From the IMG/VR virus record IMGVR_UViG_3300009011_000001, positions 1 to 64,000 of that record: a DNA stretch of 64,000 nt, one strand, 5' to 3'. Every line of letters starts with the position of its first letter. Position 1 is the stretch's first letter. Positions 4,257 to 59,478 of this stretch are shown one piece after another. Under the pieces are notes generated by a model that saw nothing but the letters and a program-made list of their open reading frames with translations, had not been told where the DNA came from and did no database searches. The position numbers were made by a program, and so were the translations under genes.

Positions 4257-4289
4257 CATATACGCCCGGCATTGAGCCGGGCGTATATG
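4257..4289. terminator. Bidirectional hairpin, CATA...TATG family
   Basis: Perfect 14-bp stem CATATACGCCCGGC-attga-GCCGGGCGTATATG between convergent genes. Confidence 0.75.
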
Positions 4290-4300
4290 TCGCAATCAGA

Positions 4301-5158
4301 TCAGGCAGCTTTCTTTTCCAGCAACTGCATGTTCTTCTGCATGGCCTCAACGTGTTGTGGCAAAACGTCCAAAAGGACGGCAGCAGCACTCACGGTAACG
4401 CCCAGCACGTAGAACAGATCGGACAGTTGGCTACCGACTTTACCGGACACTGCATCGTCGTGCTTCGCCAGATGTTCCTTGAAGCTCTTGGCGAGATCGG
4501 CGAAACGATTGACCATGGCATCGATACCCGACAGATTGGCTTTCGCCAGACGGTCGTTCAGTTCGTTGGTCAGTTTGAATGCAGTTTCCAGATCGGCGTT
4601 ACGCTCGATCAGTTTGGAAGCCTGCACTTCCGGTGCGGACGAAGTACCGAAGAACTCCTTGATTTTGTTCAGGTGTGCAACGGTGATCCAAGGAATGGTG
4701 TTCTTCAGTTCCTTGATGCCGCTTTGTGCAGCCATGCGATCAGGCTCGTTCAGAATCTGAGCCAGACGGGTGTTGCTTTTCTTCAGAGTGGCTTCCAGCG
4801 GCTCGACCACCGGCAGGATTTCATTGACGAGGTATTCGAGGAAAGGAACCCACTTACCGCTGAAACCCGGCGCTACGTGAAGAGCCAACATCCGGTTAGC
4901 GGAATAAGGCGTTTTGTTGAACGCCGTCACGGCGTCCGCATAGTGCAGGTGGTTGGAGCGGTAGTTTCCTACCTTCAAACCGTTCAGGAAGGTGGAAGAG
5001 CGATCAACGAATTCGTTGAACTTGGACTTGACGGTATCGATAAACGGCAGCGATAAGGATTCAGTAGAAAGGTCCGAACCCATGCGGCAAATGTTTTCGA
5101 GGGAATTGAGCTCGACATTAGCCAGCTCGTTCATGATGTTCGGGTTGATCTTCGGCAT
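4301..5158 (-). CDS. Virion head protein (phiKZ gp153-like), 285 aa
   Basis: Helical protein with an N-terminal S-x-E type processing motif (LSTES). Divergent from uvsX, as in the phiKZ family. Confidence 0.7.
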   Translation of the reverse strand: MPKINPNIMNELANVELNSLENICRMGSDLSTESLSLPFIDTVKSKFNEFVDRSSTFLNGLKVGNYRSNHLHYADAVTAFNKTPYSANRMLALHVAPGFSGKWVPFLEYLVNEILPVVEPLEATLKKSNTRLAQILNEPDRMAAQSGIKELKNTIPWITVAHLNKIKEFFGTSSAPEVQASKLIERNADLETAFKLTNELNDRLAKANLSGIDAMVNRFADLAKSFKEHLAKHDDAVSGKVGSQLSDLFYVLGVTVSAAAVLLDVLPQHVEAMQKNMQLLEKKAA

Positions 5159-5229
5159 GAAGGTATAGACTCCGGCTAATTCAGGGGTAAAGATTCCATA
5201 TCAGAACTATTAAGTTACTACCATTCCCT

Positions 5230-5261
5230 ATACTGTGTAATTAAATTCAGCGGAGCATTTA
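5230..5261 (+). promoter_or_regulatory. Promoter-like motif upstream of uvsX
   Basis: ATACTGTG-TAATTAA...GAGCATTTA, repeated at 59890-59918. Confidence 0.45.
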
Positions 5262-5264
5262 AAC

Positions 5265-7034: not shown

Positions 7035-7037
7035 GTC

Positions 7038-10038: not shown

Positions 10039-10476
10039 ATGACGACTCGCAAGAGATCACAACGGTCCACGTTTCGTGAACTGCTGCTTGATCACACGAA
10101 GAAACTTGACCTCAGCGAAAACGAGCTCGCCACTCTACTTCGCGACATGCTGCTCACCCATGGGATCTCACCGTCGCAGTGGGACAAAATGGCCGACCTG
10201 TATTACAGAAGGCTCAACACTAACTCGAAAGGGGAAGTGGATCTTCTGAAGGTCACGCACGATAAGAGTAACATGGCCAAGGCTCTGGCTAAGGACTCCA
10301 TCCCCTGGCGTCGATTCACTGCAGCAATTAACATCCTCGGTGTTAAGAGCTACAAGATCGCCGTGGAACTTGAGTTCCCGAATGACGTCACCTACAAACA
10401 TGAAGTACTGGTAAGGAACCGGACGTATGGCCAGCCCGCACTCGATGAAGACGAGGACGATGACAATGGCGAATGA
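10039..10476 (+). CDS. Conserved hypothetical protein with basic N-terminus and acidic tail, 145 aa
   Basis: AAGGA RBS; overlaps the next gene. Confidence 0.8.
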   Translation: MTTRKRSQRSTFRELLLDHTKKLDLSENELATLLRDMLLTHGISPSQWDKMADLYYRRLNTNSKGEVDLLKVTHDKSNMAKALAKDSIPWRRFTAAINILGVKSYKIAVELEFPNDVTYKHEVLVRNRTYGQPALDEDEDDDNGE

Positions 10477-10951
10477 GCTGCCCGATCCGAAAATGGATAA
10501 CAAAGATCATATTCGAATCGATCTAAACGCAGCCACTCGTCTTGGGCGCCTCCTGCCGTTGTTGGCGGACGTCAAAGTCAGCCACCCTACTCTCGGTGTC
10601 TTTCGAACCGGACAAGGGCTGTGGGAATACCTCAAGATCGATCAGGATGTAGTCGAACGAGACATTGAGGAGCTTCGAGTCGCCAGCGGCTTCGACGCAA
10701 AGAAGATCAGCGATAAGTATCAGCCCAAGTGGAACAAAGCGCTCAGGAATGAAATCAAGTTGGCCATGCGATCCAAGATCGAGGACAACGAAGAGATCTA
10801 CAAAGCTTTCGTTGAGAGCGTACTTCCATTCCGCTATTACCACATGTTGCGCAACAAGAAAGTGATTGAACCGAAAGAAACAGTTTGGGTAGCCGAATGG
10901 CTTAACGAACTACGAAAAGAGTTGAAAGAAAAAGTTAGCAAGACGAAGTGA
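10466..10951 (+). CDS. T4 gp30.3/NADAR-like protein (tentative), 161 aa
   Basis: GAGGA RBS. DHIRIDLNAATRLGRLL...HPTLGVFRTGQGLWEYLK resembles the recalled DHINxxxxxxTxLGRxLS...G.F.s.EgfW.yl pattern. Confidence 0.5.
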   Translation: MANELPDPKMDNKDHIRIDLNAATRLGRLLPLLADVKVSHPTLGVFRTGQGLWEYLKIDQDVVERDIEELRVASGFDAKKISDKYQPKWNKALRNEIKLAMRSKIEDNEEIYKAFVESVLPFRYYHMLRNKKVIEPKETVWVAEWLNELRKELKEKVSKTK

Positions 10952-10955: not shown

Positions 10956-11005
10956 ATACAGCAGAGGCGAAAGCCTCTGCTGTATGCCCTTCTTTCTTTT
11001 TTTTT
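10956..11005 (+). terminator. Intrinsic terminator, CATA...TATG family
   Basis: 13-bp stem ATACAGCAGAGGC-gaaa-GCCTCTGCTGTAT followed by a long T tract. Confidence 0.85.
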
Positions 11006-11039: not shown

Positions 11040-12047
11040 ATGAGTAGTCGTCTTTCAAACACGATCTTCCAAACCAACGGTCGTGACGCAATGATCGTTG
11101 AGGATGCCTACCGCATCTCGAACGACGCACCAAAGAACACCGTCTTTGATTCCCTTAAAGGGGTTTACTCTGACGGCATTGAGGGACTGAAGACTAACAC
11201 CAGTTCCGTTAAAGAATTAACCAACCTTATTCTGAGTGCTAAGCGTGGCACAGTGGATAAGGCAGATATGTTCGAACGCGCATTGAGTGCGATGGGTTCG
11301 TCCCTTCCATCTCTGCTGGGTTCGATCGGTGGTGCGCTTAAGAACCAACTGGCCTCTGTCGCCGGTACTCTCATCGGACCTGATGCTGAGAAGAACGTTA
11401 ACATCATTTACGGAAACCTTGACAAGATCATCAAGGTGGCTGGTGTTAACGACATCGATGGTCTCGCTGAGATTGTCAATGAGCTGACTGGCAATAGCGA
11501 CCTGATGAAGGTCATCAACATCGAGGCCGAAGCCGCCATCCTTGGTGGTATCACGCAACAGTTGCTGCGGTATGGCATTCCTGATCTTGTCGACGACGTC
11601 ATGGCGCAGTCGGCCAGCGACGAGGCAATCAAGAAGGCTTACCAGTTCGTCTCCACCGATTCCATTGTGGGCACGGACCTTGCAACCATCAACCGAGTGC
11701 TCGACAAGATTGGTCTGGCTGCGTATTTGGAAGTCAATCCGAATCCGATCAAGAACATCTTGGGCAGTTTCTATTTCGGTACCGATGACACGATCGATAA
11801 GTGGCCTGCAAAACGAGCGCTGTTGCTCAGCACCCTGAACCGGATCGACCCACATTGGGAAGAGTACAATCGTAACGGGACCTACGTGAAAGATCTGAAT
11901 GCCTTCACGACAGCATCAACCGATGCGAAGAAGCTGCTGAACATGGCAGATCCTGAAGCACTACTTACACTGATCGGTCCGTCATTCTTGTCGACTGGTG
12001 TGAGTTCGGTCATGAAAACCCTCTACCCTGAAGCCTACATCACCTAA
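11040..12047 (+). CDS. Virion structural protein (phiKZ-family tail/baseplate-associated), 335 aa
   Basis: GAGGG RBS. N-terminus (LSNTIFQTNGRDAMIVEDAY) resembles recalled phiKZ-family virion proteins; next to the tail module. Confidence 0.55.
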   Translation: MSSRLSNTIFQTNGRDAMIVEDAYRISNDAPKNTVFDSLKGVYSDGIEGLKTNTSSVKELTNLILSAKRGTVDKADMFERALSAMGSSLPSLLGSIGGALKNQLASVAGTLIGPDAEKNVNIIYGNLDKIIKVAGVNDIDGLAEIVNELTGNSDLMKVINIEAEAAILGGITQQLLRYGIPDLVDDVMAQSASDEAIKKAYQFVSTDSIVGTDLATINRVLDKIGLAAYLEVNPNPIKNILGSFYFGTDDTIDKWPAKRALLLSTLNRIDPHWEEYNRNGTYVKDLNAFTTASTDAKKLLNMADPEALLTLIGPSFLSTGVSSVMKTLYPEAYIT

Positions 12048-12050: not shown

Positions 12051-12082
12051 CATACAGCCAGCCCTTGCGGGCTGGCTGTATG
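12051..12082. terminator. Bidirectional hairpin, CATA...TATG family
   Basis: Perfect 14-bp stem CATACAGCCAGCCC-ttgc-GGGCTGGCTGTATG between convergent genes. Confidence 0.8.
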
Positions 12083-12086: not shown

Positions 12087-14045
12087 CTATGGCCGGTCTG
12101 TGGGTCTTGATACAGCTTTGATAATGTCACCGGGTAGGCTGTTCATCAAACCGCTTACAACGCGGTCTGGCGACTTCCACTGGTTATACGCTGCTCGACT
12201 CTGAGCCATGTTCAGCTGCCACTTACGCGTACTGTTGATCATGGTGTTCAAAGGCAAGCCGCCCAGCGTCGCCATCCAGTCAGTCCATTTGTTGTCTTCA
12301 CTGTACGTCGACTTGTTCAAAGCAGTCGCAGCAGTAACGCCCGCGCTACCTGCAACAACTTCAGCACCGGCCGTAAGAGCACCGGACAAACCGCTGAAGG
12401 CTGGGTTGATTGGCATCGACATGATGGTAGACAAGTCCACGATCGTGATGTGTACGTCGATACCCAATACCTGCCCGCCACGTTTCCAGCCCACATCGCC
12501 CACACCCCGCTCGATGGTCAGCGATTCCACCATGCCTTCACGAATCAACGTGTGACCTTGGTTGAACACTTCGAGCAGAGGAGGGCCATCGTAGGACGCC
12601 ATACCCGTAGCACGAGGCAAGGACATTGCCAAGATACCACCCAAAGGAATCATCAGGTTCTTCAATCGAACCCAATCATCGCCTGCCCACGAACGAAGAG
12701 GAATGGTAAACGTAGTCCGGTTCAAGTCTGCAGATGACGATTCGTACATCTTCTGAATGTCAGCAAACGAGTTACCGGCCAGCGCTACCAGACCTTCGAG
12801 CTGTGCAGATTCAAGGATACCCTTGGCGACGTTAGAGACCACCTCAACGGCTTTACCAACAAACCCTGCCACGTTACCATCCGCCAGGTTAAAACGCGCC
12901 ATACGAGCTTTGGAGCTCATTGCGTTGATCTCTGTCTTGATGGATGGCTCTGTCGCTTGGTTGTTGAAAGAGTCGCTGTTGGTTGGGGTGAAGTTTACAC
13001 GCAGAGTAACGAAGTCCGCACCCATGTGACGTTCGGATGTGTACGCGTTACCCGCTTTTGTCCACCAGCCTTGGTCGTCGTTTTCGTCTGGATACTTCTC
13101 GGAGTTATACGAATCCTTCTCGTTGTACTTACCGAGGAATGCAAGGTACGCAGACTCGTAGTCGGCCAGAGAGGCGCCAGGATCGTCAAGATCCATCAAC
13201 GAGTTATCCACACCGTCGTAGAGGATGCGGTTGAACTCGTCAGCGCGTTTTGCTGGGTCACCGGTCAGGTTAGCCAGAGCATCGTCCATCTTCTCGCGAT
13301 AGCGGTTAGCCAGACGTTGCGCTTTGGTCGACATACGGAACACGTCGATCCCGCCATCCGTCATCACGATACCGTCGTTCAGCACACGGTTCATGGACCC
13401 AATGTCTGCAGTCCCCGGAATGGTCAGTGGATCGAAGTAACGTTTTTGAGCATCGTTCGTGAAGTGAGGGGAAAGACCCATGTTCACAAACATCCCGTTC
13501 ACAAAACCACTGTACGCCAGCCAGTACGAGTACATGGCAGGTTTCAAGTAGTAGTACTTCGAACGAGGCATGCCTACGAAGAACTTAAACATCGAGCCGG
13601 CCAGAATGAACGGCTGCAGAGGAAGCGTACCAATAAAGCCCGCTACCTTACCGATGCTAAACCACAGATCAGGCGCACGGCCCGTACGGGCCATGGAACC
13701 TGCGTGAACGTTGTAGAAGTTACCGAAGAAGTTCGTCAGCGAGTTGAACTGAGGAACGCCACAGCGGATGTGAACCAGCTGAGCGTTATCGTCCAAGATC
13801 TCGCTATACCACCGACCCATGGGTTCAGCACTGGAGAAGATCGATGGGTGGCTGATATCGCAGTTCTCTGTGAATTGCGATAGCGGGTTAATTGCCCAAT
13901 GCCCGCCCATTGTTGTATCGATAAACTTGCGAGACGAAGATGTGCGAAAACGCCGATTGTTGTCCACCGAGTCAGACAAAGAACTGGGTGGAGCCAGAAA
14001 CGCGTGTCCAGCCCAGCTCTTGTCTAGCACGTACTTACGCGCCAT
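12087..14045 (-). CDS. Tail/baseplate structural protein (phiKZ gp182-like), 652 aa
   Basis: KFIDTTMGGHWAINPLSQFT motif; directly downstream of the tape measure; AAGGGG RBS before ATG 14045. Confidence 0.8.
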   Translation of the reverse strand: MARKYVLDKSWAGHAFLAPPSSLSDSVDNNRRFRTSSSRKFIDTTMGGHWAINPLSQFTENCDISHPSIFSSAEPMGRWYSEILDDNAQLVHIRCGVPQFNSLTNFFGNFYNVHAGSMARTGRAPDLWFSIGKVAGFIGTLPLQPFILAGSMFKFFVGMPRSKYYYLKPAMYSYWLAYSGFVNGMFVNMGLSPHFTNDAQKRYFDPLTIPGTADIGSMNRVLNDGIVMTDGGIDVFRMSTKAQRLANRYREKMDDALANLTGDPAKRADEFNRILYDGVDNSLMDLDDPGASLADYESAYLAFLGKYNEKDSYNSEKYPDENDDQGWWTKAGNAYTSERHMGADFVTLRVNFTPTNSDSFNNQATEPSIKTEINAMSSKARMARFNLADGNVAGFVGKAVEVVSNVAKGILESAQLEGLVALAGNSFADIQKMYESSSADLNRTTFTIPLRSWAGDDWVRLKNLMIPLGGILAMSLPRATGMASYDGPPLLEVFNQGHTLIREGMVESLTIERGVGDVGWKRGGQVLGIDVHITIVDLSTIMSMPINPAFSGLSGALTAGAEVVAGSAGVTAATALNKSTYSEDNKWTDWMATLGGLPLNTMINSTRKWQLNMAQSRAAYNQWKSPDRVVSGLMNSLPGDIIKAVSRPTDRP

Positions 14046-14078: not shown

Positions 14079-14098
14079 GGAGGCGGTTTCCCGCCTCC
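14079..14098 (-). terminator. Hairpin between tape measure and gp182-like gene
   Basis: GGAGGCGG/CCGCCTCC stem with GAAA loop and T-rich tail on the minus strand. Confidence 0.55.
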
Positions 14099-20812: not shown

Positions 20813-20877
20813 TACGTTTCTCTCAACATAAAGGGTGGCTATATGGTTCATACCACTTCGACACAGGGACATTGTCC

Positions 20878-26817: not shown

Positions 26818-26881
26818 TTAACCCCGTGCCCCACTCCTGGTTATGCCGGGGGTGGGTGTATGTACACTTGAGGAACTATCG

Positions 26882-29193: not shown

Positions 29194-29205
29194 GGCTTTG
29201 CAATC

Positions 29206-32874: not shown

Positions 32875-32906
32875 CATACAGGCAGGGCACACGCCCTGCC
32901 TGTATG
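32875..32906. terminator. Hairpin, CATA...TATG family
   Basis: Perfect 14-bp stem CATACAGGCAGGGC-acac-GCCCTGCCTGTATG. Confidence 0.8.
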
Positions 32907-35171: not shown

Positions 35172-35201
35172 ATACAGCTGGGGGCCAACCCCAGCTGTAT
35201 G
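35172..35201. terminator. Hairpin, (C)ATAC...GTATG family
   Basis: 12-bp stem ATACAGCTGGGG-gccaa-CCCCAGCTGTAT. Confidence 0.7.
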
Positions 35202-36014: not shown

Positions 36015-36047
36015 GCATACAGCCCGGCATTGCGCCGGGCTGTATGC
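36015..36047. terminator. Hairpin at tail tube 3' end, CATA...TATG family
   Basis: GCATACAGCCCGGC-attgc-GCCGGGCTGTATGC. Confidence 0.8.
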
Positions 36048-39133: not shown

Positions 39134-40033
39134 ATGTTCGAAACCCCATACCAGACGACCCCATGTGCAAGGTTCGTCATGGAAAAAACCAATGCGGGTA
39201 TTCGCCGTTTGGAAATCGAGGATAAACTGCTCACACTGGAGGGTTCTTTAACTGGTGTTAAAGCTGTACCTCCTGGCGAGCAGGGATTCCCTCCCTTCGG
39301 CCAACCCATTACCTCCAAGCAGATTCCAACGCTTGAGGCACCATGTGTTATCGATGGCCGTCAACTGTTTCGTGCCGACGGAAGACCCGTCCTGCAGAAC
39401 GTTGTAGACCACGCAATCCTGAACGCTGACCTTACCAACCTTTGGTTCCGTGACGGTGCGCCATTTCGGAAAGACCTGTTGAACCTAGGTCAGTTCCCCA
39501 TCAAAGTATTCACCAATTGGATCGGCAATCGGATCTCCCTTGGCCTGACATTGGACTTCGGCCAGACCAGCATCGTCAAAGCGATGCTGAGTGTTTACTA
39601 CATCCAATTGTGTACACCTCTGTCAGACCATCCTACTTCTGAAGAGTTGGAGCGCCTGATTATCCGTGCGGCTCGCTCGGTTCCAGGGGTGGATGCAACA
39701 ACACTGGAAAACGTACTCGGTGAAATTCCGAAGCTTACGGATCTGAAGAGTTTCACTGACTGGGTACACGCCCGTCTGGACACTCCTCGTTCCGAACAGC
39801 TGAACGTCGGCTTCCTTTATACGGCTCTTGGCTTCAGCTGGGGTGTGCAGTACCGCGAGATGGTGGCGATCGCTTTGGAGTATCCGCCTACCTTTATCGC
39901 TCTTCTTTTCTCCTCGGTTAATGACCGTGGGTTCAAGAAGACGAGTCTCGGCAAGACTGTTGAAACACTCACCTCCCGCAACGAAGACCATGAATTCATC
40001 AAGAACGTGAATCACCTTATCGGCCGGAGATAA
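39134..40033 (+). CDS. Virion structural protein (phiKZ gp28-like), 299 aa
   Basis: MFETPYQTTPC start; divergent from the sheath gene. Confidence 0.75.
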   Translation: MFETPYQTTPCARFVMEKTNAGIRRLEIEDKLLTLEGSLTGVKAVPPGEQGFPPFGQPITSKQIPTLEAPCVIDGRQLFRADGRPVLQNVVDHAILNADLTNLWFRDGAPFRKDLLNLGQFPIKVFTNWIGNRISLGLTLDFGQTSIVKAMLSVYYIQLCTPLSDHPTSEELERLIIRAARSVPGVDATTLENVLGEIPKLTDLKSFTDWVHARLDTPRSEQLNVGFLYTALGFSWGVQYREMVAIALEYPPTFIALLFSSVNDRGFKKTSLGKTVETLTSRNEDHEFIKNVNHLIGRR

Positions 40034-42667: not shown

Positions 42668-44425
42668 ATGGGGGTGAAAGCCCCCATCGTACCGAGTCAA
42701 ATAGACATGGCCGATAAAGAAATCAGATTGAGTAACGGCGACACGGTCATCGTTGCCGATCGCCGCAATGACACGCTGAACCTCAAAGACGTCTACAAAT
42801 ACCGCTTGACCGATAGCAGCAGTGAAATCGTTCGGGGTGAAGGTAAATACGTCCCTAAAGTCGACGACATGATTTACTCGTTCGACATCGGTTGGATGCG
42901 TGTTGCCCGTCTGGACGAATCCGATTATCACGTCGATCTGGTAATTTGGAAACTCCCAACCAACGATGACGACGTCGACAACCGTGATGAGTTGCTGGGG
43001 ATTGGCCCAGGTTCAACAAGCGAAAGCTACCGTGTCTACATCGACAGTCGTGTGTTCCCTCACCGTCTGGACATCAACTCCCGACTGCGGGCCTATTCCG
43101 ATACGGCTAAGGAAGTCCGTGTCTTTAAAGGCGACGACCCTTCTCCAACCGGCGAAGTGATTTCCGCAAACTACGATCCTGCAACCAAAGAGTATTTGGG
43201 CGACGCAATCCCAATGAAACTGGTTGCTACCGTTGAGGTGAACAACCTCGGCATCATGGCGCCGGCTTCCGGCTACACCACGGCCAATCTGAAGAACGGT
43301 GCTCCAGTTACTGTTGTGACTTACAACACGGCCGGTGCTCCAATCGATATCGCCCGCATGCTGGTGCACAACACCAACGTGATCCGTCACCCTGAGGATT
43401 ACGCCAAGCGCGTGAAGTCGATCGAACTGATCAGCCCGTACTTGTCGAAGACCGAGCCGAACACGCTGGAAGTGCCGATCAACGCCACTGTAGCGACGCT
43501 GTCGCTGCGTGCGAAGGTCACGTACACCAACGGCCTCACCAGTATCCAGGACGTCGTAGACGAGACCGCAAACGGCAAGTTCAAGCTGTTCGGTTTGATC
43601 TACTGGTCTCCTCAGATTCCTGGAGACGAGCAAGATCTGGAACTGTCGTACGCGTTGTCCGAAGGCGAGGAGTATTCCTACCTGCAGGGCGAAACTGCAA
43701 ACGGCATGGTGCAGGTCTCGTACAAGATCCGAGCGAAAGCTCTCGATCCTGCATTCACTCTGAAACTGTTCTCTTTCCCAGTGTGGAAGAACAACGTCCA
43801 GGGTTATGTACTGGAACACTGGATCTGCGACCTGGCTCGTCAAGTGACTCGTCGTGCTCCAGCGGCTGCCATTCAGCTGATCGATGGCTTCTCGGCATTC
43901 GATGGTCTGGATTACCTGACCAACCAGCGCATCCGTTTCGGTGTGGATCTGTCGGTAGTCGATCCTGCCTACGGCGGTCACACGTTTGCTCAGCTGGTTC
44001 AAATCTCCTTGCTGCGTGATGGCGGCATTGCAGGCTTGAGCAACTGGAAAGTCAAGTTCTCTGGCAACCAGGCTGAGTGGTACGGCGATCACCTGCAGGC
44101 TTCTGTTCGGGCAACCTTCAGTGGGCTGTCGACGATCAACATCGGCAACAACCTTGGCGACAAGCAAACCTTCCTCGACAAGGTGTACTACAACGCTGCG
44201 CCTCTGTACGACATCCAGACGGAAAACAAGGCTCCAGAACCTACGCACTTCATCATCTGCACGAAGACGCGTGAGTTCGAATTTCCACTGTCTCAGTGGA
44301 ATCAGGACCTGACCTTCGTCAATGATCTGACCGAGGGCCAGACGATTTACGTTAAGTGGATCAAACGCATGATCAATGCGGATCTTCAACTTGGCGTGAG
44401 TGGTTTGATCTTGCACGCAGTCTGA
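42668..44425 (+). CDS. Virion structural/baseplate protein (phiKZ gp26-like), ~585 aa
   Basis: Beta-rich protein directly upstream of terminase; start may be 42707. Confidence 0.75.
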   Translation: MGVKAPIVPSQIDMADKEIRLSNGDTVIVADRRNDTLNLKDVYKYRLTDSSSEIVRGEGKYVPKVDDMIYSFDIGWMRVARLDESDYHVDLVIWKLPTNDDDVDNRDELLGIGPGSTSESYRVYIDSRVFPHRLDINSRLRAYSDTAKEVRVFKGDDPSPTGEVISANYDPATKEYLGDAIPMKLVATVEVNNLGIMAPASGYTTANLKNGAPVTVVTYNTAGAPIDIARMLVHNTNVIRHPEDYAKRVKSIELISPYLSKTEPNTLEVPINATVATLSLRAKVTYTNGLTSIQDVVDETANGKFKLFGLIYWSPQIPGDEQDLELSYALSEGEEYSYLQGETANGMVQVSYKIRAKALDPAFTLKLFSFPVWKNNVQGYVLEHWICDLARQVTRRAPAAAIQLIDGFSAFDGLDYLTNQRIRFGVDLSVVDPAYGGHTFAQLVQISLLRDGGIAGLSNWKVKFSGNQAEWYGDHLQASVRATFSGLSTINIGNNLGDKQTFLDKVYYNAAPLYDIQTENKAPEPTHFIICTKTREFEFPLSQWNQDLTFVNDLTEGQTIYVKWIKRMINADLQLGVSGLILHAV

Positions 44426-44483
44426 CGTAAGCCACCATGGGAGGGCAACCTCCCATGGTTGTTACTATGCCGTAGGAGCAAAC

Positions 44484-46646
44484 ATGGCTATTTTGTATAA
44501 GAAGGATTGGGAGAAATACCCAACTGCAATCGCTAACGTCTACTCGCCCAATGAGTCCTGGGTGCAGATGGCGTTCAAATTAAAAGAGATGGGTGTAAAC
44601 AACTGGGAGTGGCCTCTCACTCTGATCCAGCCTCAATTGGTGGGCGTCGATATCTGGTCTCCTGACCTGACACTCAACCAGCAGATCATGATTCTGAACG
44701 AATGCGAATGGAACCCGTGGTACGTTCTTCGTGAAGTAATGCGTGTGCCAGCAAAGTCTGGTGGTGGTTTTAACTACCTTGGGGCTAACCGAGGCAACCT
44801 TGCGTTGTTCTGGTGTTTCTTCAACTCGTTCATGGTTTACCTGCAGCAGATCCGTCAGACAGGTAAGTCACTTAACGTTCGCATCCTCGTTGTTGCGTGG
44901 CACACGTTCTGGGCGCGTGGCGCTCAGCACATCCTCTTCACCAAGTCTGACCTGCGTGTTGAAGAGATTAAGGAATACAAGCTGATCCGCAGCCTGATTC
45001 CTGAGTGGATGTGGGAGCCGCACTACAAAGACTCGGACAACCAAACTGCGTTCACCACCCTGTCTCGTGGCAACACCACCAAGACCTACATTCCTGCAAC
45101 CGATGAGGAAGGTGCGAACAAAGTGGGGCGCGGTACAACCCCTACTCTGGTGACGGGTGACGAAGGTCCCTTCTTGAAGCACGCTCGGATTTCGATTGTG
45201 GCACTGTTGTCTGCAACCGGTGCATCGTTCCGTGAAGCTGAAGCGAAGGGCGCAATGTTTGGCGTTATCTTCACCACTACCGCAGGCGACTTGTCGACGG
45301 AGTCCGGTAAGTACTTCTACAACAAGATCAAACGCATGTCGATGCACTTCGCAGAGTTCCTCTACGACTGTGCCAACCGGGATGAGGCAATCGCCACCAT
45401 TCTGGCTAACGGGGCTAAAGAAGAACCTCGTGTCGACATTACATTCAGCCACAGACAGCTGGGTATCTTGGACAGTGATCTTCGCAAGATGATTGCGCGT
45501 TCGTCCGGTGAAGTGGACCAGGTGAAGCGAGACTATCTGAACCAATGGACGTTCGGTAGTGCCGCTTGCCCTATTCCTCAGGACATCCTCGACAAGATCC
45601 GTAAAGGGATCAACGACCAGCCGCTGAACGACCGTAACGGCAAGAACCAGTTCATCATTCGCTATCACTTGCCGATTGCTCAGGTTATCGCGCGTCGCAC
45701 CATTCTGGGCATGGATACCTCGAACGCTATCGGTCGAGATGCTATTTCCGGGATCCTGTCCGATGTGGAAACTGGCGAGACATTGGCAGCGTTTACTGTC
45801 AGCGAATCGAACCTCAGTATCTTCACCATGTGGCTGGCTGACTTGTTTGAACTCTGGCCTTTGATGACCTTGGTTCCAGAAGCCAAATCGTCGTGGGACG
45901 GTATTCGGGATCGTTTGCTGATCGAACTGCCTTCTCGCGGTATCGACCCAGGTCGTCGTATCTACAGCCGCGTTGTCGATGATGCTGAAAGCAGTGAATC
46001 GGATCGCCGTCGTTATCGAGAGTATTCGCAAGGTGTTCCGAGCGAACGTAAGTACGCACCGCACCGTAACCAATTCGGTTTCCCAACCAGCGGCACACTT
46101 CGTGAGTCGATGTACGGCGAAATCCTGCGTGAAGCTACCAAGAATGGACCAGGTCTGATTCGTGACCAAATCCTGATCGATGAATTGTCGAGTCTTGTAA
46201 TGAAACGTGGCCGTATTGACCACGCTGCATCTGGACACGATGACCACGTAATCTCTTGGCTGATGAACCAGTGGTTCCTGCGGTATGCGCGTAACTACGA
46301 TCACTACGGCATTCCTTCTCAGTCGGTACTGTCCCGTCTGCGTCATGCTGCTGTGGCTGATGATCCAAAAGAAACTTCAAGGATGATGAAGCAGGAAAAG
46401 CTCAAGCGTCAGGTTGCCGAGCTGGAAGCCCGGATCGAGAATGCGAAATCCGCAATGGAAATCGCGTACTACCAAACCCGTGTGAACTCTCTGCGGTCGG
46501 AAATGACTGAGGAAGACAACAGTCAGATCGACAGTGTGGATCGCGCATCCGAACGGAGTCGCGAAGTACGGCAGAACTATGCCAAAGAGAAATACCGCAA
46601 CACCTCAATCGCAGAGCAAATTCGCCCTACTTGGTTGAGAAGGTAA
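44484..46646 (+). CDS. terL: Terminase large subunit (phiKZ gp25-like), 720 aa
   Basis: Walker A QIRQTGKS, Walker B LVTGDE, nuclease motifs ILGMDTS and HDDHVISWL. Confidence 0.93.
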   Translation: MAILYKKDWEKYPTAIANVYSPNESWVQMAFKLKEMGVNNWEWPLTLIQPQLVGVDIWSPDLTLNQQIMILNECEWNPWYVLREVMRVPAKSGGGFNYLGANRGNLALFWCFFNSFMVYLQQIRQTGKSLNVRILVVAWHTFWARGAQHILFTKSDLRVEEIKEYKLIRSLIPEWMWEPHYKDSDNQTAFTTLSRGNTTKTYIPATDEEGANKVGRGTTPTLVTGDEGPFLKHARISIVALLSATGASFREAEAKGAMFGVIFTTTAGDLSTESGKYFYNKIKRMSMHFAEFLYDCANRDEAIATILANGAKEEPRVDITFSHRQLGILDSDLRKMIARSSGEVDQVKRDYLNQWTFGSAACPIPQDILDKIRKGINDQPLNDRNGKNQFIIRYHLPIAQVIARRTILGMDTSNAIGRDAISGILSDVETGETLAAFTVSESNLSIFTMWLADLFELWPLMTLVPEAKSSWDGIRDRLLIELPSRGIDPGRRIYSRVVDDAESSESDRRRYREYSQGVPSERKYAPHRNQFGFPTSGTLRESMYGEILREATKNGPGLIRDQILIDELSSLVMKRGRIDHAASGHDDHVISWLMNQWFLRYARNYDHYGIPSQSVLSRLRHAAVADDPKETSRMMKQEKLKRQVAELEARIENAKSAMEIAYYQTRVNSLRSEMTEEDNSQIDSVDRASERSREVRQNYAKEKYRNTSIAEQIRPTWLRR

Positions 46647-46649: not shown

Positions 46650-46682
46650 CATACAGCCCGGCCGCAATGGCCGGGCTGTATG
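46650..46682. terminator. Bidirectional hairpin, CATA...TATG family
   Basis: Perfect 14-bp stem CATACAGCCCGGCC-gcaat-GGCCGGGCTGTATG between convergent genes. Confidence 0.8.
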
Positions 46683-46685: not shown

Positions 46686-47906
46686 TCAGGCTCTCCAGCG
46701 GTGCATTGTCCATGCCCGCATCAACACGTAAAGCAGTACTGCGTTTCGAACAGATGCGATGAGTACGGCGTTCTTCGATCGGATGGCATTGGATACAACA
46801 CCCTCGGTCAATTCGCGCAGCTCAAGGATCATTGGGTTGGTTGTCCGACTTGCCTGATACAGCGCTCGCATTTTACGCAGAAGTCCCGGCACGTCGCTTT
46901 GAGATTGCATCGTGGTAGGGTTCTTTGCCAGATAGTCGAACGCATGTTGCAGAACCAGCTCACAGATGCGCTGTATGCGCTTGTCAGCTCGAACAGACGA
47001 GTTCTCGGACATGTACGTCAATGTGGTAACGAGCGCGCTACGCGGCATTGTAGTGACTGCGCTGGAAATCAGGTCCACCATCTCAGGAACGATGAAGCTG
47101 TTCTTATCTGGGACAGTGTCCAGGATGTAGCGCACGTATTTACTGGTCAGCCGGCTCTTGTCCCGAACCTTCAGCTCGCCATCCAGCTCAATGGTTGAGC
47201 TGGCATTACGCATCTGCATTGATGGATCGTTCTTCACCATTTCGAACACGTCACGCACATTCTTGATGATGTCCTTGATTCGACCTTGGATGTCGTTCGA
47301 CATGTAGTCAATCTTGTCCGTGAAGTCAATCAGGTTCTTGTAGTGCAGACCACCTTTGCGCACGATGTCTTCAGACCGTTGTCTCAGCAGTGCGCCCCAG
47401 CTACCAGCAACCTTCAGACCGAAGCGTTTGTTCAACGCAGCGTAAGTGGCCTCAGCAATAGCAGGGTCGGCATCGTACTTGAAGAAGTGGGTCATGATCG
47501 AAGTCGTGTGTTTGTACTGCAGAACCAGTGCGCATTCAAAGGCGCCGTGATGCCGCTCGTCTTCGTTGAGCTTATCGCTCGTCAGGAACCGGTGGATCAT
47601 GTATAGACAAGACATGTTGAAAACGTCGGAGGAGACGTGGCGATGGGTCACAACCTCTGGAAGTTCATGCAGCTCATCTTCCAGGTAATGTTCATCCACC
47701 TCCATGATCTCTTGGAACCAGCGGTGTCTATCCTCGTCTTTAAATCGAATCGGGTGAACGCCCATCAAGTTACCGCCAAAGAAAGCGATGTGGGATTCGT
47801 TCTTCGTTGCAAAGCGCTGCTCGTACTCCTCGACTCGCTTGAGAAGTTTCTTGTCAAAGACAAGATGCGAGCAGTGACTATCAAATACGCTCTTGATGTT
47901 GTTCAT
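46686..47906 (-). CDS. Conserved virion protein (phiKZ gp32-like), 406 aa
   Basis: KNESHIAFFGGNLMGVHPIRF motif; converges on terminase. Confidence 0.72.
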   Translation of the reverse strand: MNNIKSVFDSHCSHLVFDKKLLKRVEEYEQRFATKNESHIAFFGGNLMGVHPIRFKDEDRHRWFQEIMEVDEHYLEDELHELPEVVTHRHVSSDVFNMSCLYMIHRFLTSDKLNEDERHHGAFECALVLQYKHTTSIMTHFFKYDADPAIAEATYAALNKRFGLKVAGSWGALLRQRSEDIVRKGGLHYKNLIDFTDKIDYMSNDIQGRIKDIIKNVRDVFEMVKNDPSMQMRNASSTIELDGELKVRDKSRLTSKYVRYILDTVPDKNSFIVPEMVDLISSAVTTMPRSALVTTLTYMSENSSVRADKRIQRICELVLQHAFDYLAKNPTTMQSQSDVPGLLRKMRALYQASRTTNPMILELRELTEGVVSNAIRSKNAVLIASVRNAVLLYVLMRAWTMHRWRA

Positions 47907-52022: not shown

Positions 52023-52060
52023 AGCAGGTGCCTTCGGGCACCTGCTTTTATTTTTCTTTT
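52023..52060 (+). terminator. Intrinsic terminator
   Basis: AGCAGGTGCC-TTCG-GGCACCTGCT followed by a T tract. Confidence 0.9.
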
Positions 52061-55253: not shown

Positions 55254-55784
55254 ATGTCATTCGAAATGATTGAACTTGTGGACTATCTTGAAGAAGCCGA
55301 CTTCGTTGAGAAGTTCAGTGCGGGCGACACTGGTGAACCGGTTACGGAGGAGTACGCTCTTCGTTTGCTGAGCGCTACCGCAAAGTTCTATCTTGAAAAC
55401 AAGATCGTTCAGGCCGCGCTTCTCGAAGTCGAAAAGTTCCAACAAAAACAGGATCTGGTTGGACATGAACCTTTCCCGGAGCCTTGGAAAAAATCTGTCG
55501 TCATTTGCGGGCGAATTGAACGCTTCTTGTATCCTGGCACAAAGATGTTGCCGTGGATGTACAGCACAGCCCATACGGCAATGGAAAAGAAGGTAATCGT
55601 CCTGCAACTTAAGGACTATGGTCCCATCGCCAAGTGTAGCTTTGCGCCATCTCGTGATGGTGTGCCGATGGATCCAAAGTTTGTTGCGGAGCGTGAGCTT
55701 CGGGTAAAGCTGAATTTTGAATCGCTTCAGGGCATTATGTATCAACGCAACAGCCATGTCGTCAGACGTCTGGCTGAAAGCTAG
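55254..55784 (+). CDS. Hypothetical protein, 176 aa
   Basis: GGGAGG RBS. Confidence 0.8.
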   Translation: MSFEMIELVDYLEEADFVEKFSAGDTGEPVTEEYALRLLSATAKFYLENKIVQAALLEVEKFQQKQDLVGHEPFPEPWKKSVVICGRIERFLYPGTKMLPWMYSTAHTAMEKKVIVLQLKDYGPIAKCSFAPSRDGVPMDPKFVAERELRVKLNFESLQGIMYQRNSHVVRRLAES

Positions 55785-55792: not shown

Positions 55793-55823
55793 CATAGGGC
55801 TCGGCATCGCGCCGGGCTTTATG
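55793..55823. terminator. Hairpin, CATA...TATG family (wobble pairs)
   Basis: CATAGGGCTCGGC-atcgc-GCCGGGCTTTATG. Confidence 0.65.
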
Positions 55824-56589: not shown

Positions 56590-56850
56590 TGGGAAAGGGG
56601 AAGAGGGGGTGGATTTCGAGGTACGAGAAATCCGGGGGTGATAGGGATAGGGTAAGACGCAATCCGAAGATGCGAGTGTAACGATGCTGATGAGGATTAT
56701 CTAATGCGACGAAGTCGCATAGGGAAGTTATTTTTTACAGTGTGGTCGAATGATATTCCTTAAATCGGACTGGGCCTAAATACCCAGTCCTGTATGTCGC
56801 AATAGATCCAAAGATAAAGAGCAATAAGGAAGGGAGGCTGAAGGCCTCCC
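56590..56850. other. Structured non-coding region (G-run tract plus five hairpins); candidate origin/primase/packaging signal
   Basis: Hairpins at 56611-56633, 56661-56698, 56704-56720, 56767-56790 and 56832-56850; six runs of at least 3 G in 56591-56652; no credible ORF. Confidence 0.5.
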
Positions 56851-56898: not shown

Positions 56899-57468
56899 AT
56901 GAAAGCTTATTCTGCATTCCTGAATTCCGTAGGTCAGTCCCGTAACCAAGCTTCGATGGAAGCAGGTAAACCGAAAGATCGTGACGACAGCAATACCTTT
57001 GACTCTGCTCAAGACGATGACAAAGGTCTGCGTCTGGCTAGCGAGCCGGGTTACCGCGAAGTGAATAACGTCATGATCGAACTGAACACTCCTCTGGATC
57101 AGTATCAGGACTCGATCACCTTCGTGACTGAATCGTTGCGTAAAGAAGGTTGGAAAGTGCGCCTGCGCTGCAAAGGCGAAGAGATCAGCGTTGAGAGTTT
57201 CAGCGATGGCATCATGCCTGGCGGCATCTCCCTCAATGGTGCCAACGAAGTCAACAACGTGATGAACGGTGTCTACGTCCCTGACTTTAAGGATGAAGAC
57301 CTGTACCGCGCTGTTAGCGTCATCCGTCCTGAGGACACCGCTCCTGATAGCAAAGAGGGCGTATTGTTCTTGGTTGATGGTAATGGTGATATTAAAGATT
57401 ACTTGGCAGGCGAAGGTTATAAGGTCGCAACCGATGCTGATACCCTGCAGGCCTTGTTGACGGCATAA
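56899..57468 (+). CDS. Putative protease-processed head protein, 189 aa
   Basis: ASMEA and SVES are S-x-E motifs of the kind cut by phiKZ-type prohead proteases. Confidence 0.55.
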   Translation: MKAYSAFLNSVGQSRNQASMEAGKPKDRDDSNTFDSAQDDDKGLRLASEPGYREVNNVMIELNTPLDQYQDSITFVTESLRKEGWKVRLRCKGEEISVESFSDGIMPGGISLNGANEVNNVMNGVYVPDFKDEDLYRAVSVIRPEDTAPDSKEGVLFLVDGNGDIKDYLAGEGYKVATDADTLQALLTA

Positions 57469-57510
57469 AGACCGATGCGGTTGCCCGCATCGATCCAAGC
57501 CTGAAATAGT

Positions 57511-57520: not shown

Positions 57521-57532
57521 TAAGGTGTACAG

Positions 57533-58369
57533 TTACATCCTTGGCTTACCGCCCATGGATAGCTTCATGACCTTACGGTACTTGTCCGGATCCATCAGGA
57601 TCGCGAGCTTCGCCCACTTGACGTCAACGAATTCGTTGTACATCGTGTTGGCATCTGCGTAGCCGTCGATAATCTCGCGGACTCGACCAAGCGTGGCACC
57701 GCCACGAATGAAGCCTTCATCCAAGTCGATAATCAAGGTATTGTAAACGTGCGCTTTAACGGCAAGCACAACCATCTCACCGAAGTCCCGGTAGTACGGT
57801 TGTTTGATGTCGTTGAAGTTGGGCTCGTGACTGACCGTACAACGCAGCGCTGCGTCACCCATCACCTGGTTCGAGTCGTTGACAAGAACGGTGTTGTGGT
57901 TTAGCAACTGAACGTAGGCAGTCCCCATCATTGCAACGCCATTCGTGGCGCGGATGATGTTCCTGACATCTTTCAAGATGCCGGAGTTACGAGAGTCAAA
58001 TCCCGTAGCGGTAGAGCCCGCCAACCCTTGAGTCAATCCGTAGATCAGCTCATGAACTGTGCTGATTTTACGATTCCCCAATGCATGAGGAGGGAACCGA
58101 TAGATAATGTTCCAAGTGTCGACGTACTCACGATCGGCATCGCGCATCGGCAACAAGATTTCCGTACCGCCGACCAAGTTGCAGTCAATGGCGACACGAC
58201 CATCGATGACGAGTTCCCGAATCTTTTCATCGAGGCTGATCGAGTCAACGTTGTCGAAGTAACGGTCTTGACGCGTCGGATCGTAACGTTTTGCAGTAAA
58301 AGCTTGTTGTAAAATCTCGCGAGGGATTTCCCTCATTACACGTTGGATAGCTACGCTGATAGGCGTCAT
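57533..58369 (-). CDS. Virion structural protein (phiKZ gp42-like), 278 aa
   Basis: AGGAG RBS. MTPISVAIQRVMREIPREILQQAF start typical of the recalled family; divergent from phuZ. Confidence 0.65.
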   Translation of the reverse strand: MTPISVAIQRVMREIPREILQQAFTAKRYDPTRQDRYFDNVDSISLDEKIRELVIDGRVAIDCNLVGGTEILLPMRDADREYVDTWNIIYRFPPHALGNRKISTVHELIYGLTQGLAGSTATGFDSRNSGILKDVRNIIRATNGVAMMGTAYVQLLNHNTVLVNDSNQVMGDAALRCTVSHEPNFNDIKQPYYRDFGEMVVLAVKAHVYNTLIIDLDEGFIRGGATLGRVREIIDGYADANTMYNEFVDVKWAKLAILMDPDKYRKVMKLSMGGKPRM

Positions 58370-58431
58370 GTCACGTACGCTCCTGACAAACAATCTATAT
58401 TCATATCAGCAAAGAAAAGGAACACAAACCA

Positions 58432-59436
58432 ATGACCTCCGGCCAATTGATTCAGTCGAAAACTCGCAGTGTGACCTTCTACGCCTGTGGCGGTCCTGGC
58501 GCCAATTTGCTGCGCACTCATCGCGAAGATCATCCTCTGGCTAACGCCTCGGCGATTGCTGATGAGAAGTACTGCTTCATCGACACCAGTATTGCCAACC
58601 TGGCTGGCGTCACTCTGGAAGACACTTACGTTCTGGAAGGTCTCGACGGCTCGGGTTCCGATCGCCCTCGTAACGCCAAAGCGATCAAGGAAGCCATGCC
58701 GGCCATCCTGAACAAGTTCAAGCCAGGCGACATCAACATCGTTCTGTTCAGCGCCGCTGGCGGTACCGGTTCGACTGCAGGTCCAATCCTGATCGAAGAA
58801 CTGCTGAAGGCCGGTAAGAAAGTGTTCGCAATCATCAGCGGTGCTCACGGCACCCTGAAGGCAACTGCAAACACCATCGCTACCCTGACCGGTCTGGAAG
58901 GCACCGTCAAACGTGTCAACCGTCCGGTGGTCATGTCGTATCGCGAAAACGATCCGACCAAGAACAATGCCGCCAACAACGTCGTTGCTCTGATGACCAT
59001 GTCGGCCCTGTCTCTGCTGTGCTCCGGCAAGAACATCCAGCTGGACGGCGCAGATATCGGCAACCTGGTCGACTATCCTGCTGTGACTCACTTCCCGGCT
59101 TCTCTGGCCATGCTCGACGTGTACGTCAACGAAGATCAACTGATCAACGAAGCCACCAGCGCTATCGCTCACCTCGCTCTGCTGAAGAACGAAGATGCGG
59201 TAATGCCGGCGATCAACCCAGCCTACGGCAAGTATGGCTACCTGCCAGCAGAAGCTGCTGAACGTTACAAAGAGTCTTTCCACTATGTGGTCAGCAACTC
59301 TCGCCTGAAAGGCGTCCTGGAAAAGCTGCTCCAGCGTCGTGAAGAGCTCGAGTCAGCTCAAGCCGTGATTGAGCGCCAAACCAGCCTGTCGACGCCGAAC
59401 GTGAAGATCGACGAAGACACCGGCCTGGTGTTCTAA
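58432..59436 (+). CDS. phuZ: PhuZ tubulin-like spindle protein, 334 aa
   Basis: YACGGPGANL, FIDTS, GSGSDR, G-box SAAGGTGS, T7-loop LDGAD, acidic-hydrophobic tail IDEDTGLVF. Confidence 0.95.
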   Translation: MTSGQLIQSKTRSVTFYACGGPGANLLRTHREDHPLANASAIADEKYCFIDTSIANLAGVTLEDTYVLEGLDGSGSDRPRNAKAIKEAMPAILNKFKPGDINIVLFSAAGGTGSTAGPILIEELLKAGKKVFAIISGAHGTLKATANTIATLTGLEGTVKRVNRPVVMSYRENDPTKNNAANNVVALMTMSALSLLCSGKNIQLDGADIGNLVDYPAVTHFPASLAMLDVYVNEDQLINEATSAIAHLALLKNEDAVMPAINPAYGKYGYLPAEAAERYKESFHYVVSNSRLKGVLEKLLQRREELESAQAVIERQTSLSTPNVKIDEDTGLVF

Positions 59437-59447
59437 TCACACCGTGA

Positions 59448-59478
59448 CATAGCGAGGCGGGAAACCGCCTCGTTTATG
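59448..59478. terminator. Hairpin, CATA...TATG family
   Basis: CATAGCGAGGCGG-gaaa-CCGCCTCGTTTATG (one bulge). Confidence 0.7.

What the first reader, a model, noticed from the sequence alone, without database searches (positions are those of the whole stretch)
4257..59478. Family of CATA...TATG hairpins that may combine terminator and late promoter on either strand
Seen: at least nine intergenic hairpins (4257, 10956, 12051, 32875, 35172, 36015, 46650, 55793, 59448) have variable GC-rich upper stems but almost always a base of CATA(C)/(G)TATG. Related hairpins at ~26830, ~44434 and 56767 keep only the downstream TATG. Most lack a U-tract, and four lie between convergent genes. Established: TATG overlapping the start site is the phiKZ late promoter consensus. 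Inference: conservation of the stem-base sequence is more than pairing needs, so it may be a protein-recognised element that stops one transcript and offers TATG to the non-virion RNAP in both directions (giving antisense RNA at convergent junctions), or it may be a processing site.
Basis: partly seen in the sequence, partly recalled or inferred. Interest (0 to 1): 0.6.

Follow-up and report, generated by a model that had tools for sequence, protein, structure and literature searches.

The report
Two-way terminator hairpins of a jumbo phage
The CATA...TATG hairpins are real and far beyond chance, but they are this phiKZ-like jumbo phage's version of the conserved transcription terminators already mapped in phiKZ and 201phi2-1, many made symmetric so that they stop transcripts from both directions; a promoter role is not excluded for the same-direction TATG between tandem genes and is unlikely on the opposite strand.

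Summary
The window is the first 64 kb of a 248.6-kb phiKZ-like (chimallivirus) genome from a rhizosphere metagenome. All twelve listed hairpins exist.

**Scale of the family**
- About 50 of 90 strong intergenic hairpins carry TATG at their 3' base on one or both strands, against 4 of 198 hairpins inside genes.
- 27 are near-perfect CATA...TATG palindromes; reversed-sequence controls give 0.

**What the motif is**
- The sense-side consensus is a GC stem followed by T-N-T-A-T-G-Y-Y-G-T. This matches the published phiKZ terminator motif (hairpin plus YTTATKYYGT).
- In 201phi2-1, all eight validated termination sites named in the paper lie on such a hairpin. RNA ends 1-2 nt after the G there, and seven of the eight fold with an outer CATA/TATG helix.

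**Placement by gene context**
- The element fills 70% of convergent strand contexts and 14% of tandem sense contexts.
- It fills 0 of 48 divergent (promoter-only) contexts.

**Evolution**
- Upper stems change by compensatory substitutions: 45 double changes against 3 single changes.
- In every orthologue pair that could be parsed, TATG/CATA is unchanged.

**TATG as a start word**
- TATG without a hairpin is conserved upstream of genes.
- It is avoided inside genes on both strands.

**Verdict**
- Terminators: supported.
- Promoter on either strand: not supported.
- Same-direction restart at tandem junctions: untested.

The parts
4257..4289 (.). Two-sided hairpin (14 bp, CATA...TATG) between convergent genes 3853-4251(+) and 4301-5158(-); both tails read TATG-Y-Y-G
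   Evidence: (-26.4/-27.0 kcal/mol); conserved in G001/G002; syntenic hairpin with TATG tails on both strands in pPa_SNUABM_DT01
10956..10986 (+). One-sided terminator hairpin after 10466-10951(+); TATG at 10983-10986, then a T9 run at 10997-11005
   Evidence: in G001 the stem is replaced by an unrelated one while TATGCCG is kept
12051..12082 (.). Two-sided hairpin filling the 39-nt spacer between convergent genes 11040-12047(+) and 12087-13820(-, virion protein)
   Evidence: the orthologue in G001/G002 has a different, compensated stem; a syntenic two-sided hairpin in DT01; identical copies at 209644 and, inverted, at 128154
26830..26862 (+). G.U-containing hairpin after the virion-RNAP gene 22555-26817(+), followed by TATG at 26859-26862
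   Evidence: sense -21.8 vs antisense -12.6 kcal/mol, so it is an RNA-level, sense-strand structure; the 26859 TATG is conserved in G001
32875..32906 (+). Palindromic hairpin at a tandem junction after 31444-32871(+); sense tail TATGCCGT
   Evidence: orthologues in G001/G002 have a changed stem; a syntenic hairpin in DT01
35172..35201 (+). One-sided terminator hairpin after 34698-35159(+); TATG at 35198-35201
36015..36047 (.). Two-sided hairpin between 35579-35953(+) and the virion-protein/tail-sheath operon 36055-38987(-)
   Evidence: orthologues
44432..44469 (+). Hairpin after virion-protein gene 42707-44425(+), with unpaired tail TATGCCGT (44466-44473) 14 nt before the terminase gene
46650..46682 (.). 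Two-sided hairpin filling the 39-nt spacer between terminase 44484-46646(+) and 46686-47906(-)
   Evidence: G002 differs from G001 by two compensatory pair changes within nearly identical flanks
55793..55823 (+). CATA...TATG hairpin with G.U pairs after 55254-55784(+)
   Evidence: sense -19.6 vs antisense -10.7 kcal/mol
56767..56796 (+). Short hairpin with tail TATGTCG (TATG at 56793-56796)
57464..57495 (-).
59448..59478 (+). Hairpin after the PhuZ tubulin gene 58432-59436(+); tail TTTATGCCGT
5197..5200 (-). Example of the second class: a hairpin-less TATG (minus strand) 39 nt upstream of gene 4301-5158(-) at a divergent junction. It is conserved in G001, has no YYGT extension, and is a candidate late-type promoter. 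Others are at 20827(-), 20842(+), 47974(-) and 58402(-).

Best explanation
These are the phage's own hairpin-type transcription terminators, the same element mapped experimentally in phiKZ and 201phi2-1. A GC-rich RNA stem-loop is followed by an 8-nt tail, U-N-U-A-U-G-Y-Y, and the transcript is released at Y just before a conserved G.

In this lineage the 5' flank is usually the mirror image of the tail (..CAUA). That has two consequences. First, the released RNA can close an outer CAUA/UAUG helix that leaves only about 2 unpaired 3' nucleotides; this is inferred to protect against 3' exonucleases. Second, when the whole tail (TATGYYG) is mirrored, the element works from either direction, and this is the form found at nearly all convergent gene pairs.

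The tail core equals the nvRNAP start word TATG. This phage also appears to use that word, without a hairpin, as a promoter core.

Shown: sequence family, placement, covariation, and homology to mapped terminators. Inferred: the release point in this phage, 3'-end sequestration, and which polymerase reads the element.
For: **Motif identity**
- The sense-side consensus is T(-5) N TATG Y Y G T after a GC stem. The phiKZ terminator motif from 61 mapped 3' ends is hairpin plus YTTATKYYGT (PMC10914365).
- My own phiKZ scan finds 58 such sites.

**Experimental anchor**
- All eight 201phi2-1 termination sites named in PMC11512511 lie on a hairpin plus TATG/TATA tail. Four of these terminators outperformed, and two matched, lambda T0 in a reporter assay.
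- At these sites the RNA 3' end is at +3 in seven and at +2 in one, counting G as +1. Seven of the eight fold with an outer CATA/TATG helix; the TATA-tailed site does not.

**Placement**
- 35 of 50 convergent strand contexts, 35 of 244 tandem sense contexts, and 0 of 48 divergent contexts (P about 6e-4).
- The median distance from stop codon to hairpin is 9 nt. The distance to the next start codon is wide (median 54, up to 261).

**Convergent spacers**
- These are often just the hairpin, 39-60 nt long.

**Selection for pairing**
- There are 45 compensatory double changes against 3 single changes. Whole stems are sometimes replaced while TATG(YYG) stays.

**RNA-level, sense-strand structure**
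- Sense RNA is more stable than antisense in 32 tandem spacers and less stable in 15 (p = 0.02). G.U pairs occur at 26830 and 55793.

**Conservation in a cultured phage**
- The same two-sided hairpins sit at syntenic junctions in pPa_SNUABM_DT01, which shares under 40% protein identity.
Against: - No RNA data exist for this phage or its close relatives, so no 3' end has been observed here.
- Long-read 3' ends in the model phages cannot separate true termination from processing back to a hairpin.
- The invariant A and G in the tail are not explained by a weak RNA-DNA hybrid alone.
- Stems fall into a few recurring types, with identical copies at unrelated loci. Simple terminator function does not require that.
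- My gene calls are home-made. One 951-aa shadow ORF had to be corrected, so a few junction classes may be wrong.
Confidence: 0.75

Rival explanations
1. Stop-and-restart element in the sense direction. The hairpin ends the upstream transcript at +3, and the same TATG, with G as +1, serves the nvRNAP as a late promoter for the next gene. This is the first reader's idea restricted to the sense strand of tandem junctions, and it is compatible with the best explanation.
For: - TATG is necessary for phiKZ nvRNAP initiation (PMC4666361).
- TATG behaves as a genome-wide signal here. In coding DNA it is at 0.38 of the synonymous-shuffle expectation on the sense strand and 0.42 on the antisense strand, lower than CTAG.
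- Hairpin-less TATG is the most conserved intergenic tetramer facing genes: 23 of 29, against a 36% background.
- At 20 of 31 tandem terminators the tail TATG is the only promoter-like word before the next start codon.
- Six of 14 TATG-pocket residues of phiKZ gp123 are identical in the homologue, including the stacking residues F151, H185 and H331. Overall identity is 24%.
Against: - The same full motif is equally frequent and conserved at convergent junctions, where there is nothing to restart.
- It never occurs in promoter-only contexts.
- Promoter-type TATGs lack the YYGT extension, and the model late promoter P119L has no hairpin.
- The distance to the next start codon is unconstrained.
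- The papers I could read do not report starts coinciding with terminators.
Confidence: 0.25
2. Bidirectional promoter/terminator on either strand, giving antisense RNA at convergent junctions.
For: - The palindromes place TATG on both strands.
- At convergent junctions both sides also keep YYG (27 of 35).
Against: - At convergent junctions each side faces the end of an oncoming gene, which is exactly what a two-way terminator needs.
- 0 of 48 divergent contexts carry the element.
- The antisense halves at tandem junctions mostly lose the G at +4 (7 of 24 with YYG).
- Antisense TATG is strongly avoided inside genes.
- Only 4 antisense RNAs with a defined start are reported for phiKZ.
Confidence: 0.07
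3. RNA processing or stability element. Transcripts read through, an endonuclease cuts in the conserved tail or exonucleases trim back to the hairpin, and the hairpin protects the 3' end. It might also mark mRNA for handling at the phage nucleus.
For: - The tail sequence is more specific than a U-tract.
- The outer CAUA/UAUG helix would leave a 2-nt overhang.
- 3'-end sequencing cannot tell processing from termination.
- The recurring stem types could reflect a binding protein.
Against: - 201phi2-1 elements of this type reduced downstream reporter expression in uninfected host cells; four of eight outperformed and two matched lambda T0. That is what terminators do.
- The geometry (GC stem plus an 8-nt tail) is that of intrinsic terminators.
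Confidence: 0.12
4. DNA-level element: cruciform-forming or protein-bound palindromes, or mobile REP/MITE-like repeats.
For: - The palindromes are perfect.
- Three sets of identical copies occur at unrelated loci, in both orientations.
- A few elements have no counterpart in G001.
Against: - Pairing, not sequence, is conserved in the upper stems.
- One-sided members and G.U-containing members work on only one strand.
- Positions are orthologous across phages with under 40% protein identity.
- The elements are tied strictly to gene 3' ends.
Confidence: 0.04

Closest known systems
Conserved phiKZ terminator motif (hairpin + YTTATKYYGT; 61 mapped sites; Putzeys et al. 2024, PMC10914365)
   Same: - A GC-rich stem-loop followed by the same tail word.
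- Intergenic, at gene 3' ends.
- Two-way versions between convergent genes (6 in phiKZ).
- Shared loop words (attgc/gcaat/ttcg).
   Different: - Here the position after TAT is essentially always G; in phiKZ it is G or T.
- The stems differ: CCCGGC, CCAGCCC and GCAGGGC types here, GCCCTCCC in phiKZ.
- The tail is usually drawn into a perfect 13-17-bp palindrome. Under the same strict rule I count 27 here and 0 in phiKZ.
201phi2-1 terminator motifs A+B ('elongated hairpin'), validated in vivo (PMC11512511)
   Same: - All eight named sites have the GC core and a TATG/TATA tail; seven also fold with an outer CATA/TATG helix.
- RNA ends at +3 (seven sites) or +2 (one site) after the G.
- 15 of 132 termination sites are bidirectional.
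   Different: In 201phi2-1 the outer helix is separated from the core by 1-2-nt internal loops. Here it is continuous. No RNA or reporter data exist for this phage.
[quoted passage not shown]
   Same: The same four letters. This genome also conserves hairpin-less TATG upstream of genes and avoids TATG elsewhere.
   Different: - Late promoters need no hairpin; P119L has none.
- They show no conserved downstream sequence, whereas the hairpin-linked sites carry YYGT and sit at gene ends.
Bacterial bidirectional intrinsic terminators at convergent genes (A-tract, hairpin, U-tract; from my own knowledge, not checked here)
   Same: A symmetric hairpin whose 5' flank complements the 3' tail. It sits in very short spacers between convergent genes.
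   Different: The U-tract is replaced by a specific word, UNUAUGYY, whose A and G are invariant.

Membership tests
phiKZ-type conserved terminator | GC-rich stem-loop of about 8 bp or more | tested here: met
   Stems have 8-17 pairs and stabilities of -14 to -29 kcal/mol.
phiKZ-type conserved terminator | Tail YTTATKYYGT directly 3' of the stem | tested here: met
   Consensus of 70 sense-side elements: T at -5 in 89%, TATG, Y at +2 in 92%, Y at +3 in 97%, G at +4 in 74%, T at +5 in 66%.
phiKZ-type conserved terminator | Lies just downstream of genes, in the gene's orientation; two-way at convergent pairs | tested here: met
   70% of convergent contexts, 14% of tandem sense contexts, 0% of divergent contexts. 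Median distance from stop codon to hairpin is 9 nt.
phiKZ-type conserved terminator | Transcript 3' ends map to the tail | not testable with these tools
   No RNA run holds this phage. In 201phi2-1 the eight named sites end at +2/+3.
phiKZ-type conserved terminator | Positional conservation in related chimalliviruses | tested here: met
   Orthologous hairpins are present in G001, G002 and pPa_SNUABM_DT01.
phiKZ late promoter | TATG with G as the start site | tested here: inconclusive
   The word is present, but no 5' ends can be examined.
phiKZ late promoter | Placed upstream of genes that need a start, including where no upstream transcript exists | tested here: not met
   0 of 48 divergent contexts carry hairpin+TATG, while 35 of 50 convergent contexts do.
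phiKZ late promoter | No conserved flanking sequence or hairpin required | tested here: not met
   Hairpin-linked sites carry YYGT and a stem. Hairpin-less conserved TATGs and P119L carry neither.
REP/MITE-like mobile palindromes | Copies inserted at non-orthologous places, varying between close relatives | tested here: not met
   Most elements are positionally orthologous across genomes about 72% identical in DNA, and even in DT01. Only a few lack a counterpart. Identical copies do exist.

The most novel reading that the evidence does not exclude
One four-letter word, TATG, is read by the phage polymerase in two ways. Naked, it marks a start. Placed 5-6 nt after a GC hairpin and followed by YYG, it helps to stop the enzyme, possibly through the same non-template-strand pocket of the gp123-like subunit. 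Because the RNA ends 2 nt past the would-be +1 G, a terminating polymerase would be positioned to restart at once. Terminator and late promoter would then be one overlapping signal, at least on the sense strand.
Probability: 0.2. Interest if true: 0.75.

Novelty: new member of a known kind. Interest (0 to 1): 0.35.

Why it matters
For annotation, this gives a simple, well-supported rule for marking transcript ends, and two-way stops, in an uncultured chimallivirus lineage: a GC hairpin followed by TNTATGYYGT.

For the field, two by-products may be useful.
- TATG is avoided inside genes on both strands more strongly than any control word tested. Hairpin-less TATG is the best-conserved intergenic word facing genes. 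[quoted passage not shown]
- The terminator tail of phiKZ-like phages contains the late-promoter word, and mapped RNA ends lie 1-2 nt after its G. The papers I could read do not remark on this overlap. It makes a stop/restart or shared-recognition model directly testable with existing phiKZ and 201phi2-1 data.

Tried and rejected
- **Near-identical search in the phage collection:** no match. The nearest named phages share under 40% identity in the virion-RNAP protein.
- **Rfam at gathering thresholds:** nothing in the window.
- **RNA evidence:** the one run search found only DNA metagenome holders, the best being the probable source. I therefore did not use read laying, since contigs cannot show RNA ends.
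- **Supplementary start and termination tables:** those of the phiKZ and 201phi2-1 papers are not held, and Ceyssens 2014 is not held. I could not intersect late start sites with terminator tails.
- **Two terminator classes for two polymerases:** I considered that hairpins without TATG (UUCG loops, CTTTCTT tails, T-runs) might serve early genes and TATG-type hairpins late genes. I rejected this on inspection of the position lists, not a computed test: units that begin at the ACATTAC promoter-like word mostly end at TATG-type hairpins.
- **T-runs as part of the element:** only 6 of about 50 members have one.
- **TATG at divergent junctions:** it is not enriched over plain base composition by a rough hand count. 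The case for a promoter role rests on conservation and avoidance, not on counts.
- **gp123 pocket comparison:** weak evidence. Identity is 24%, the alignment is uncertain, and 6 of 14 residues are identical.
- **Searches not needed:** the large protein searches, structure prediction and complex prediction.
Full report
**What the window is.** The window is bases 1-64000 of a 248,574-bp virus record with terminal repeats. GC content is 52%.
- It encodes split virion-RNAP beta/beta' pieces (20872-22548 and 22555-26817), a large tail-associated lysin-like protein, a terminase, a tail sheath, a head protease and a PhuZ tubulin.
- Outside the window it encodes a homologue of the phiKZ nvRNAP beta-like subunit gp123.
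- It has no near-identical record among deposited phages, and its best protein matches are under 40% identical.
- The only sequencing run holding all of it is a rhizosphere metagenome, which is probably its source. No RNA run holds it.

Every listed hairpin is at its stated place.
- A neutral scan for hairpins of at least 8 pairs finds 288 in the genome, 90 of them intergenic.
- 48-50 of the intergenic ones have TATG at the 3' base on one strand (about 20) or both strands (about 30). Only 4 of 198 intragenic hairpins do.
- TATG is the most enriched tetramer at hairpin bases, 10-fold in this genome and 6.7-fold in a relative.
- Near-perfect CATA...TATG palindromes number 27, 26 and 14 in this genome and two relatives. 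Reversed-sequence controls give none.

**The motif is longer than TATG and is directional.** I aligned 70 elements that face the end of a co-oriented gene.
- The consensus is a GC stem, then T(-5) N T A T G(+1) Y(+2) Y(+3) G(+4) T(+5). The frequencies are 89% T, 92% Y, 97% Y, 74% G and 66% T.
- Where the hairpin is symmetric but sits between tandem genes, the antisense half keeps CATA, which pairing demands. It mostly loses the G at +4.
- TATG-Y-Y-G is present in 51 of 70 sense sides against 7 of 24 antisense sides (Fisher p = 2e-4).
- At convergent junctions both sides keep it (27 of 35).
- The two flanks often differ at the YY positions, so they are not conserved for pairing with each other. 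Each follows the consensus on its own strand (read directly from the sequences).

**Placement says 'stop', not 'start'.** I used my own gene calls, corrected where PHROG hits showed a 951-aa shadow ORF. I classed each strand-specific element by its neighbours.
- Only a stop is needed (convergent): 35 of 50 contexts are filled.
- Tandem, sense: 35 of 244.
- Tandem, antisense: 24 of 244.
- Only a start is needed (divergent): 0 of 48. This has P about 6e-4 if the tandem rate applied.
- Hairpins sit a median 9 nt after the stop codon. The distance from TATG to the next start codon is broad (median 54, up to 261).
- Spacers between convergent genes are often nothing but the hairpin, 39-60 nt long.

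**Evolution.** Two uncultured relatives were fetched. G001 is 237 kb, syntenic and about 72% identical in DNA. G002 is 127 kb and about 91% identical to G001.
- At orthologous junctions the hairpin persists but its upper stem changes freely. There are 45 double compensatory changes against 3 single changes. Sometimes the whole stem is replaced.
- CATA/TATG is unchanged in every orthologue pair that could be parsed, 18 deep and 10 shallow pairs. The sense-side TATG(YYG) is kept even where it moves out of the stem.
- G001 and G002 differ by two compensated pairs in the terminase hairpin within otherwise nearly identical flanks.
- Two window hairpins (26830, 55793) use G.U pairs that work only on the sense strand.
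- Across tandem spacers the sense RNA is the more stable in 32 cases against 15. This points to an RNA structure rather than a DNA cruciform.
- The cultured P. aeruginosa phage pPa_SNUABM_DT01 has the same gene order. It carries the same two-sided hairpins at the syntenic junctions, corresponding to window 4257, 12051, 32875 and 36015.

**It matches a known, experimentally mapped element.**
- Long-read mapping in phiKZ found 133 termination regions. Of these, 61 share a hairpin followed by YTTATKYYGT, and six are two-way between convergent genes (PMC10914365). My scan of phiKZ finds 58 such sites, a few of them mirrored.
- In 201phi2-1, 59 of 132 sites share that motif and 15 are bidirectional. 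Sites where a second motif lengthens the stem terminate best. In a reporter assay in uninfected host cells, four of eight such terminators outperformed and two matched lambda T0 (PMC11512511).
- I fetched the eight named positions. All eight are a GC hairpin plus a TATG tail (one has TATA). Seven of the eight fold with an outer CATA/TATG helix. The reported RNA end is the second Y after the G in seven and the first Y in one.
- The tail is therefore the 8-nt stretch between stem and release point, the normal geometry of an intrinsic terminator. Release occurs at a pyrimidine just before the conserved G.
- This explains the YYG. It also suggests why CATA is kept at tandem junctions. Once released, the RNA can zip UAUG onto CAUA and leave only two unpaired 3' nucleotides. 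That last point is inference.

**Is TATG also a start word here? Probably, but in a different setting.**
- Inside genes, TATG occurs at 0.38 of the number expected after shuffling synonymous codons (z = -20). Its complement, CATA, is at 0.42 (z = -12). Both are lower than CTAG (0.48) and every other control word tested, which lie at 0.60-1.07.
- Genome-wide it is the second most under-represented tetramer. The same holds in G001 and, more weakly, in phiKZ.
- In spacers aligned between this genome and G001, TATG without a hairpin and facing the next gene is the best-conserved tetramer: 23 of 29, against a 36% background. Several of these sit at divergent junctions, and they lack YYGT.
- The model late promoter P119L of phiKZ likewise has no hairpin.
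- Avoidance on both strands fits a word read on DNA as a start. It also argues against deliberately aiming such starts into the 3' ends of converging genes.

**What remains open.**
- At 20 of 31 tandem terminators the tail TATG is the only promoter-like word before the next start codon. A same-direction restart is therefore not excluded.
- The invariant A and G of the tail, and the small repertoire of stem types with identical copies at unrelated loci, are not explained by simple termination.
- A shared reading of TATG by the polymerase at starts and stops is possible but untested. The gp123-like subunit keeps 6 of 14 pocket residues at 24% overall identity, which is weak support only.

**Verdict.** The 'promoter on either strand' half is not supported. 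The element is a new member of a known kind, in a somewhat more symmetric form.

Noticed in passing
window 39036-39068: The mirror image of the terminator layout sits at a divergent junction between the tail-sheath operon (-) and 39134-40033 (+). TATG, then an 8-bp hairpin (39044-39065), then CATA, so on each strand TATG precedes the hairpin. It is conserved in G001. It is a candidate pair of face-to-face late promoters whose transcripts would begin with a 5' hairpin.
   Followed up: partly
window 34586-34592; also G000 78871, 83899, 137541, 143284, 148633, 151657, 163912, 164996, 175719: The word ACATTAC, often (c)ACATTAC(y), lies 31-42 nt upstream of nine of these start codons (105 nt at 34586). 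It resembles the phiKZ middle-promoter word AAanTTACc and is a likely promoter element of another class.
   Followed up: partly
window 10997-11005, 34555-34562, 35995-36003; 13 more in G000: All 16 runs of seven or more T lie on the plus strand (no A-runs). Fifteen are intergenic and lie downstream of a hairpin, most after a pyrimidine-rich spacer of 7-14 nt ending in TTC and followed by G; three follow the stem directly or within 3 nt. Six sit at convergent junctions, always on the plus-strand side. The meaning is unknown.
   Followed up: partly
window 34521-34544, 35963-35982, 52023-52046, 14079-14098: A second class of intergenic hairpins has no TATG. Three of the four have UUCG loops, with pyrimidine-rich tails (such as CTTTCTT) and sometimes a T-run. 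They are presumably terminators of a plainer kind.
   Followed up: no
window 28558-31413 (-): A 951-aa open frame on the minus strand has no family hit. It lies opposite three real plus-strand genes, among them a virion protein and the head maturation protease. It is a long shadow ORF that fooled a codon-usage gene caller.
   Followed up: yes
window 12051-12082 = G000 209644-209675 = inverted G000 128154-128185; also 36016/90295 and 46650/102190: Identical 31-33-nt hairpins occur at unrelated junctions, some in opposite orientation. Only a few stem types recur (CAGCCCGG x6, CAGCCAGC x4). This suggests copying between terminators or a narrow optimum.
   Followed up: partly
window 2331-3830 (+): A protein related to RNase H (PHROG 3265/531) sits at the same place as the 'putative ribonuclease H' of pPa_SNUABM_DT01. 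It may correspond to the RNase H-clamp protein recently described for chimalliviruses (PMC13648698), but this was not compared.
   Followed up: no
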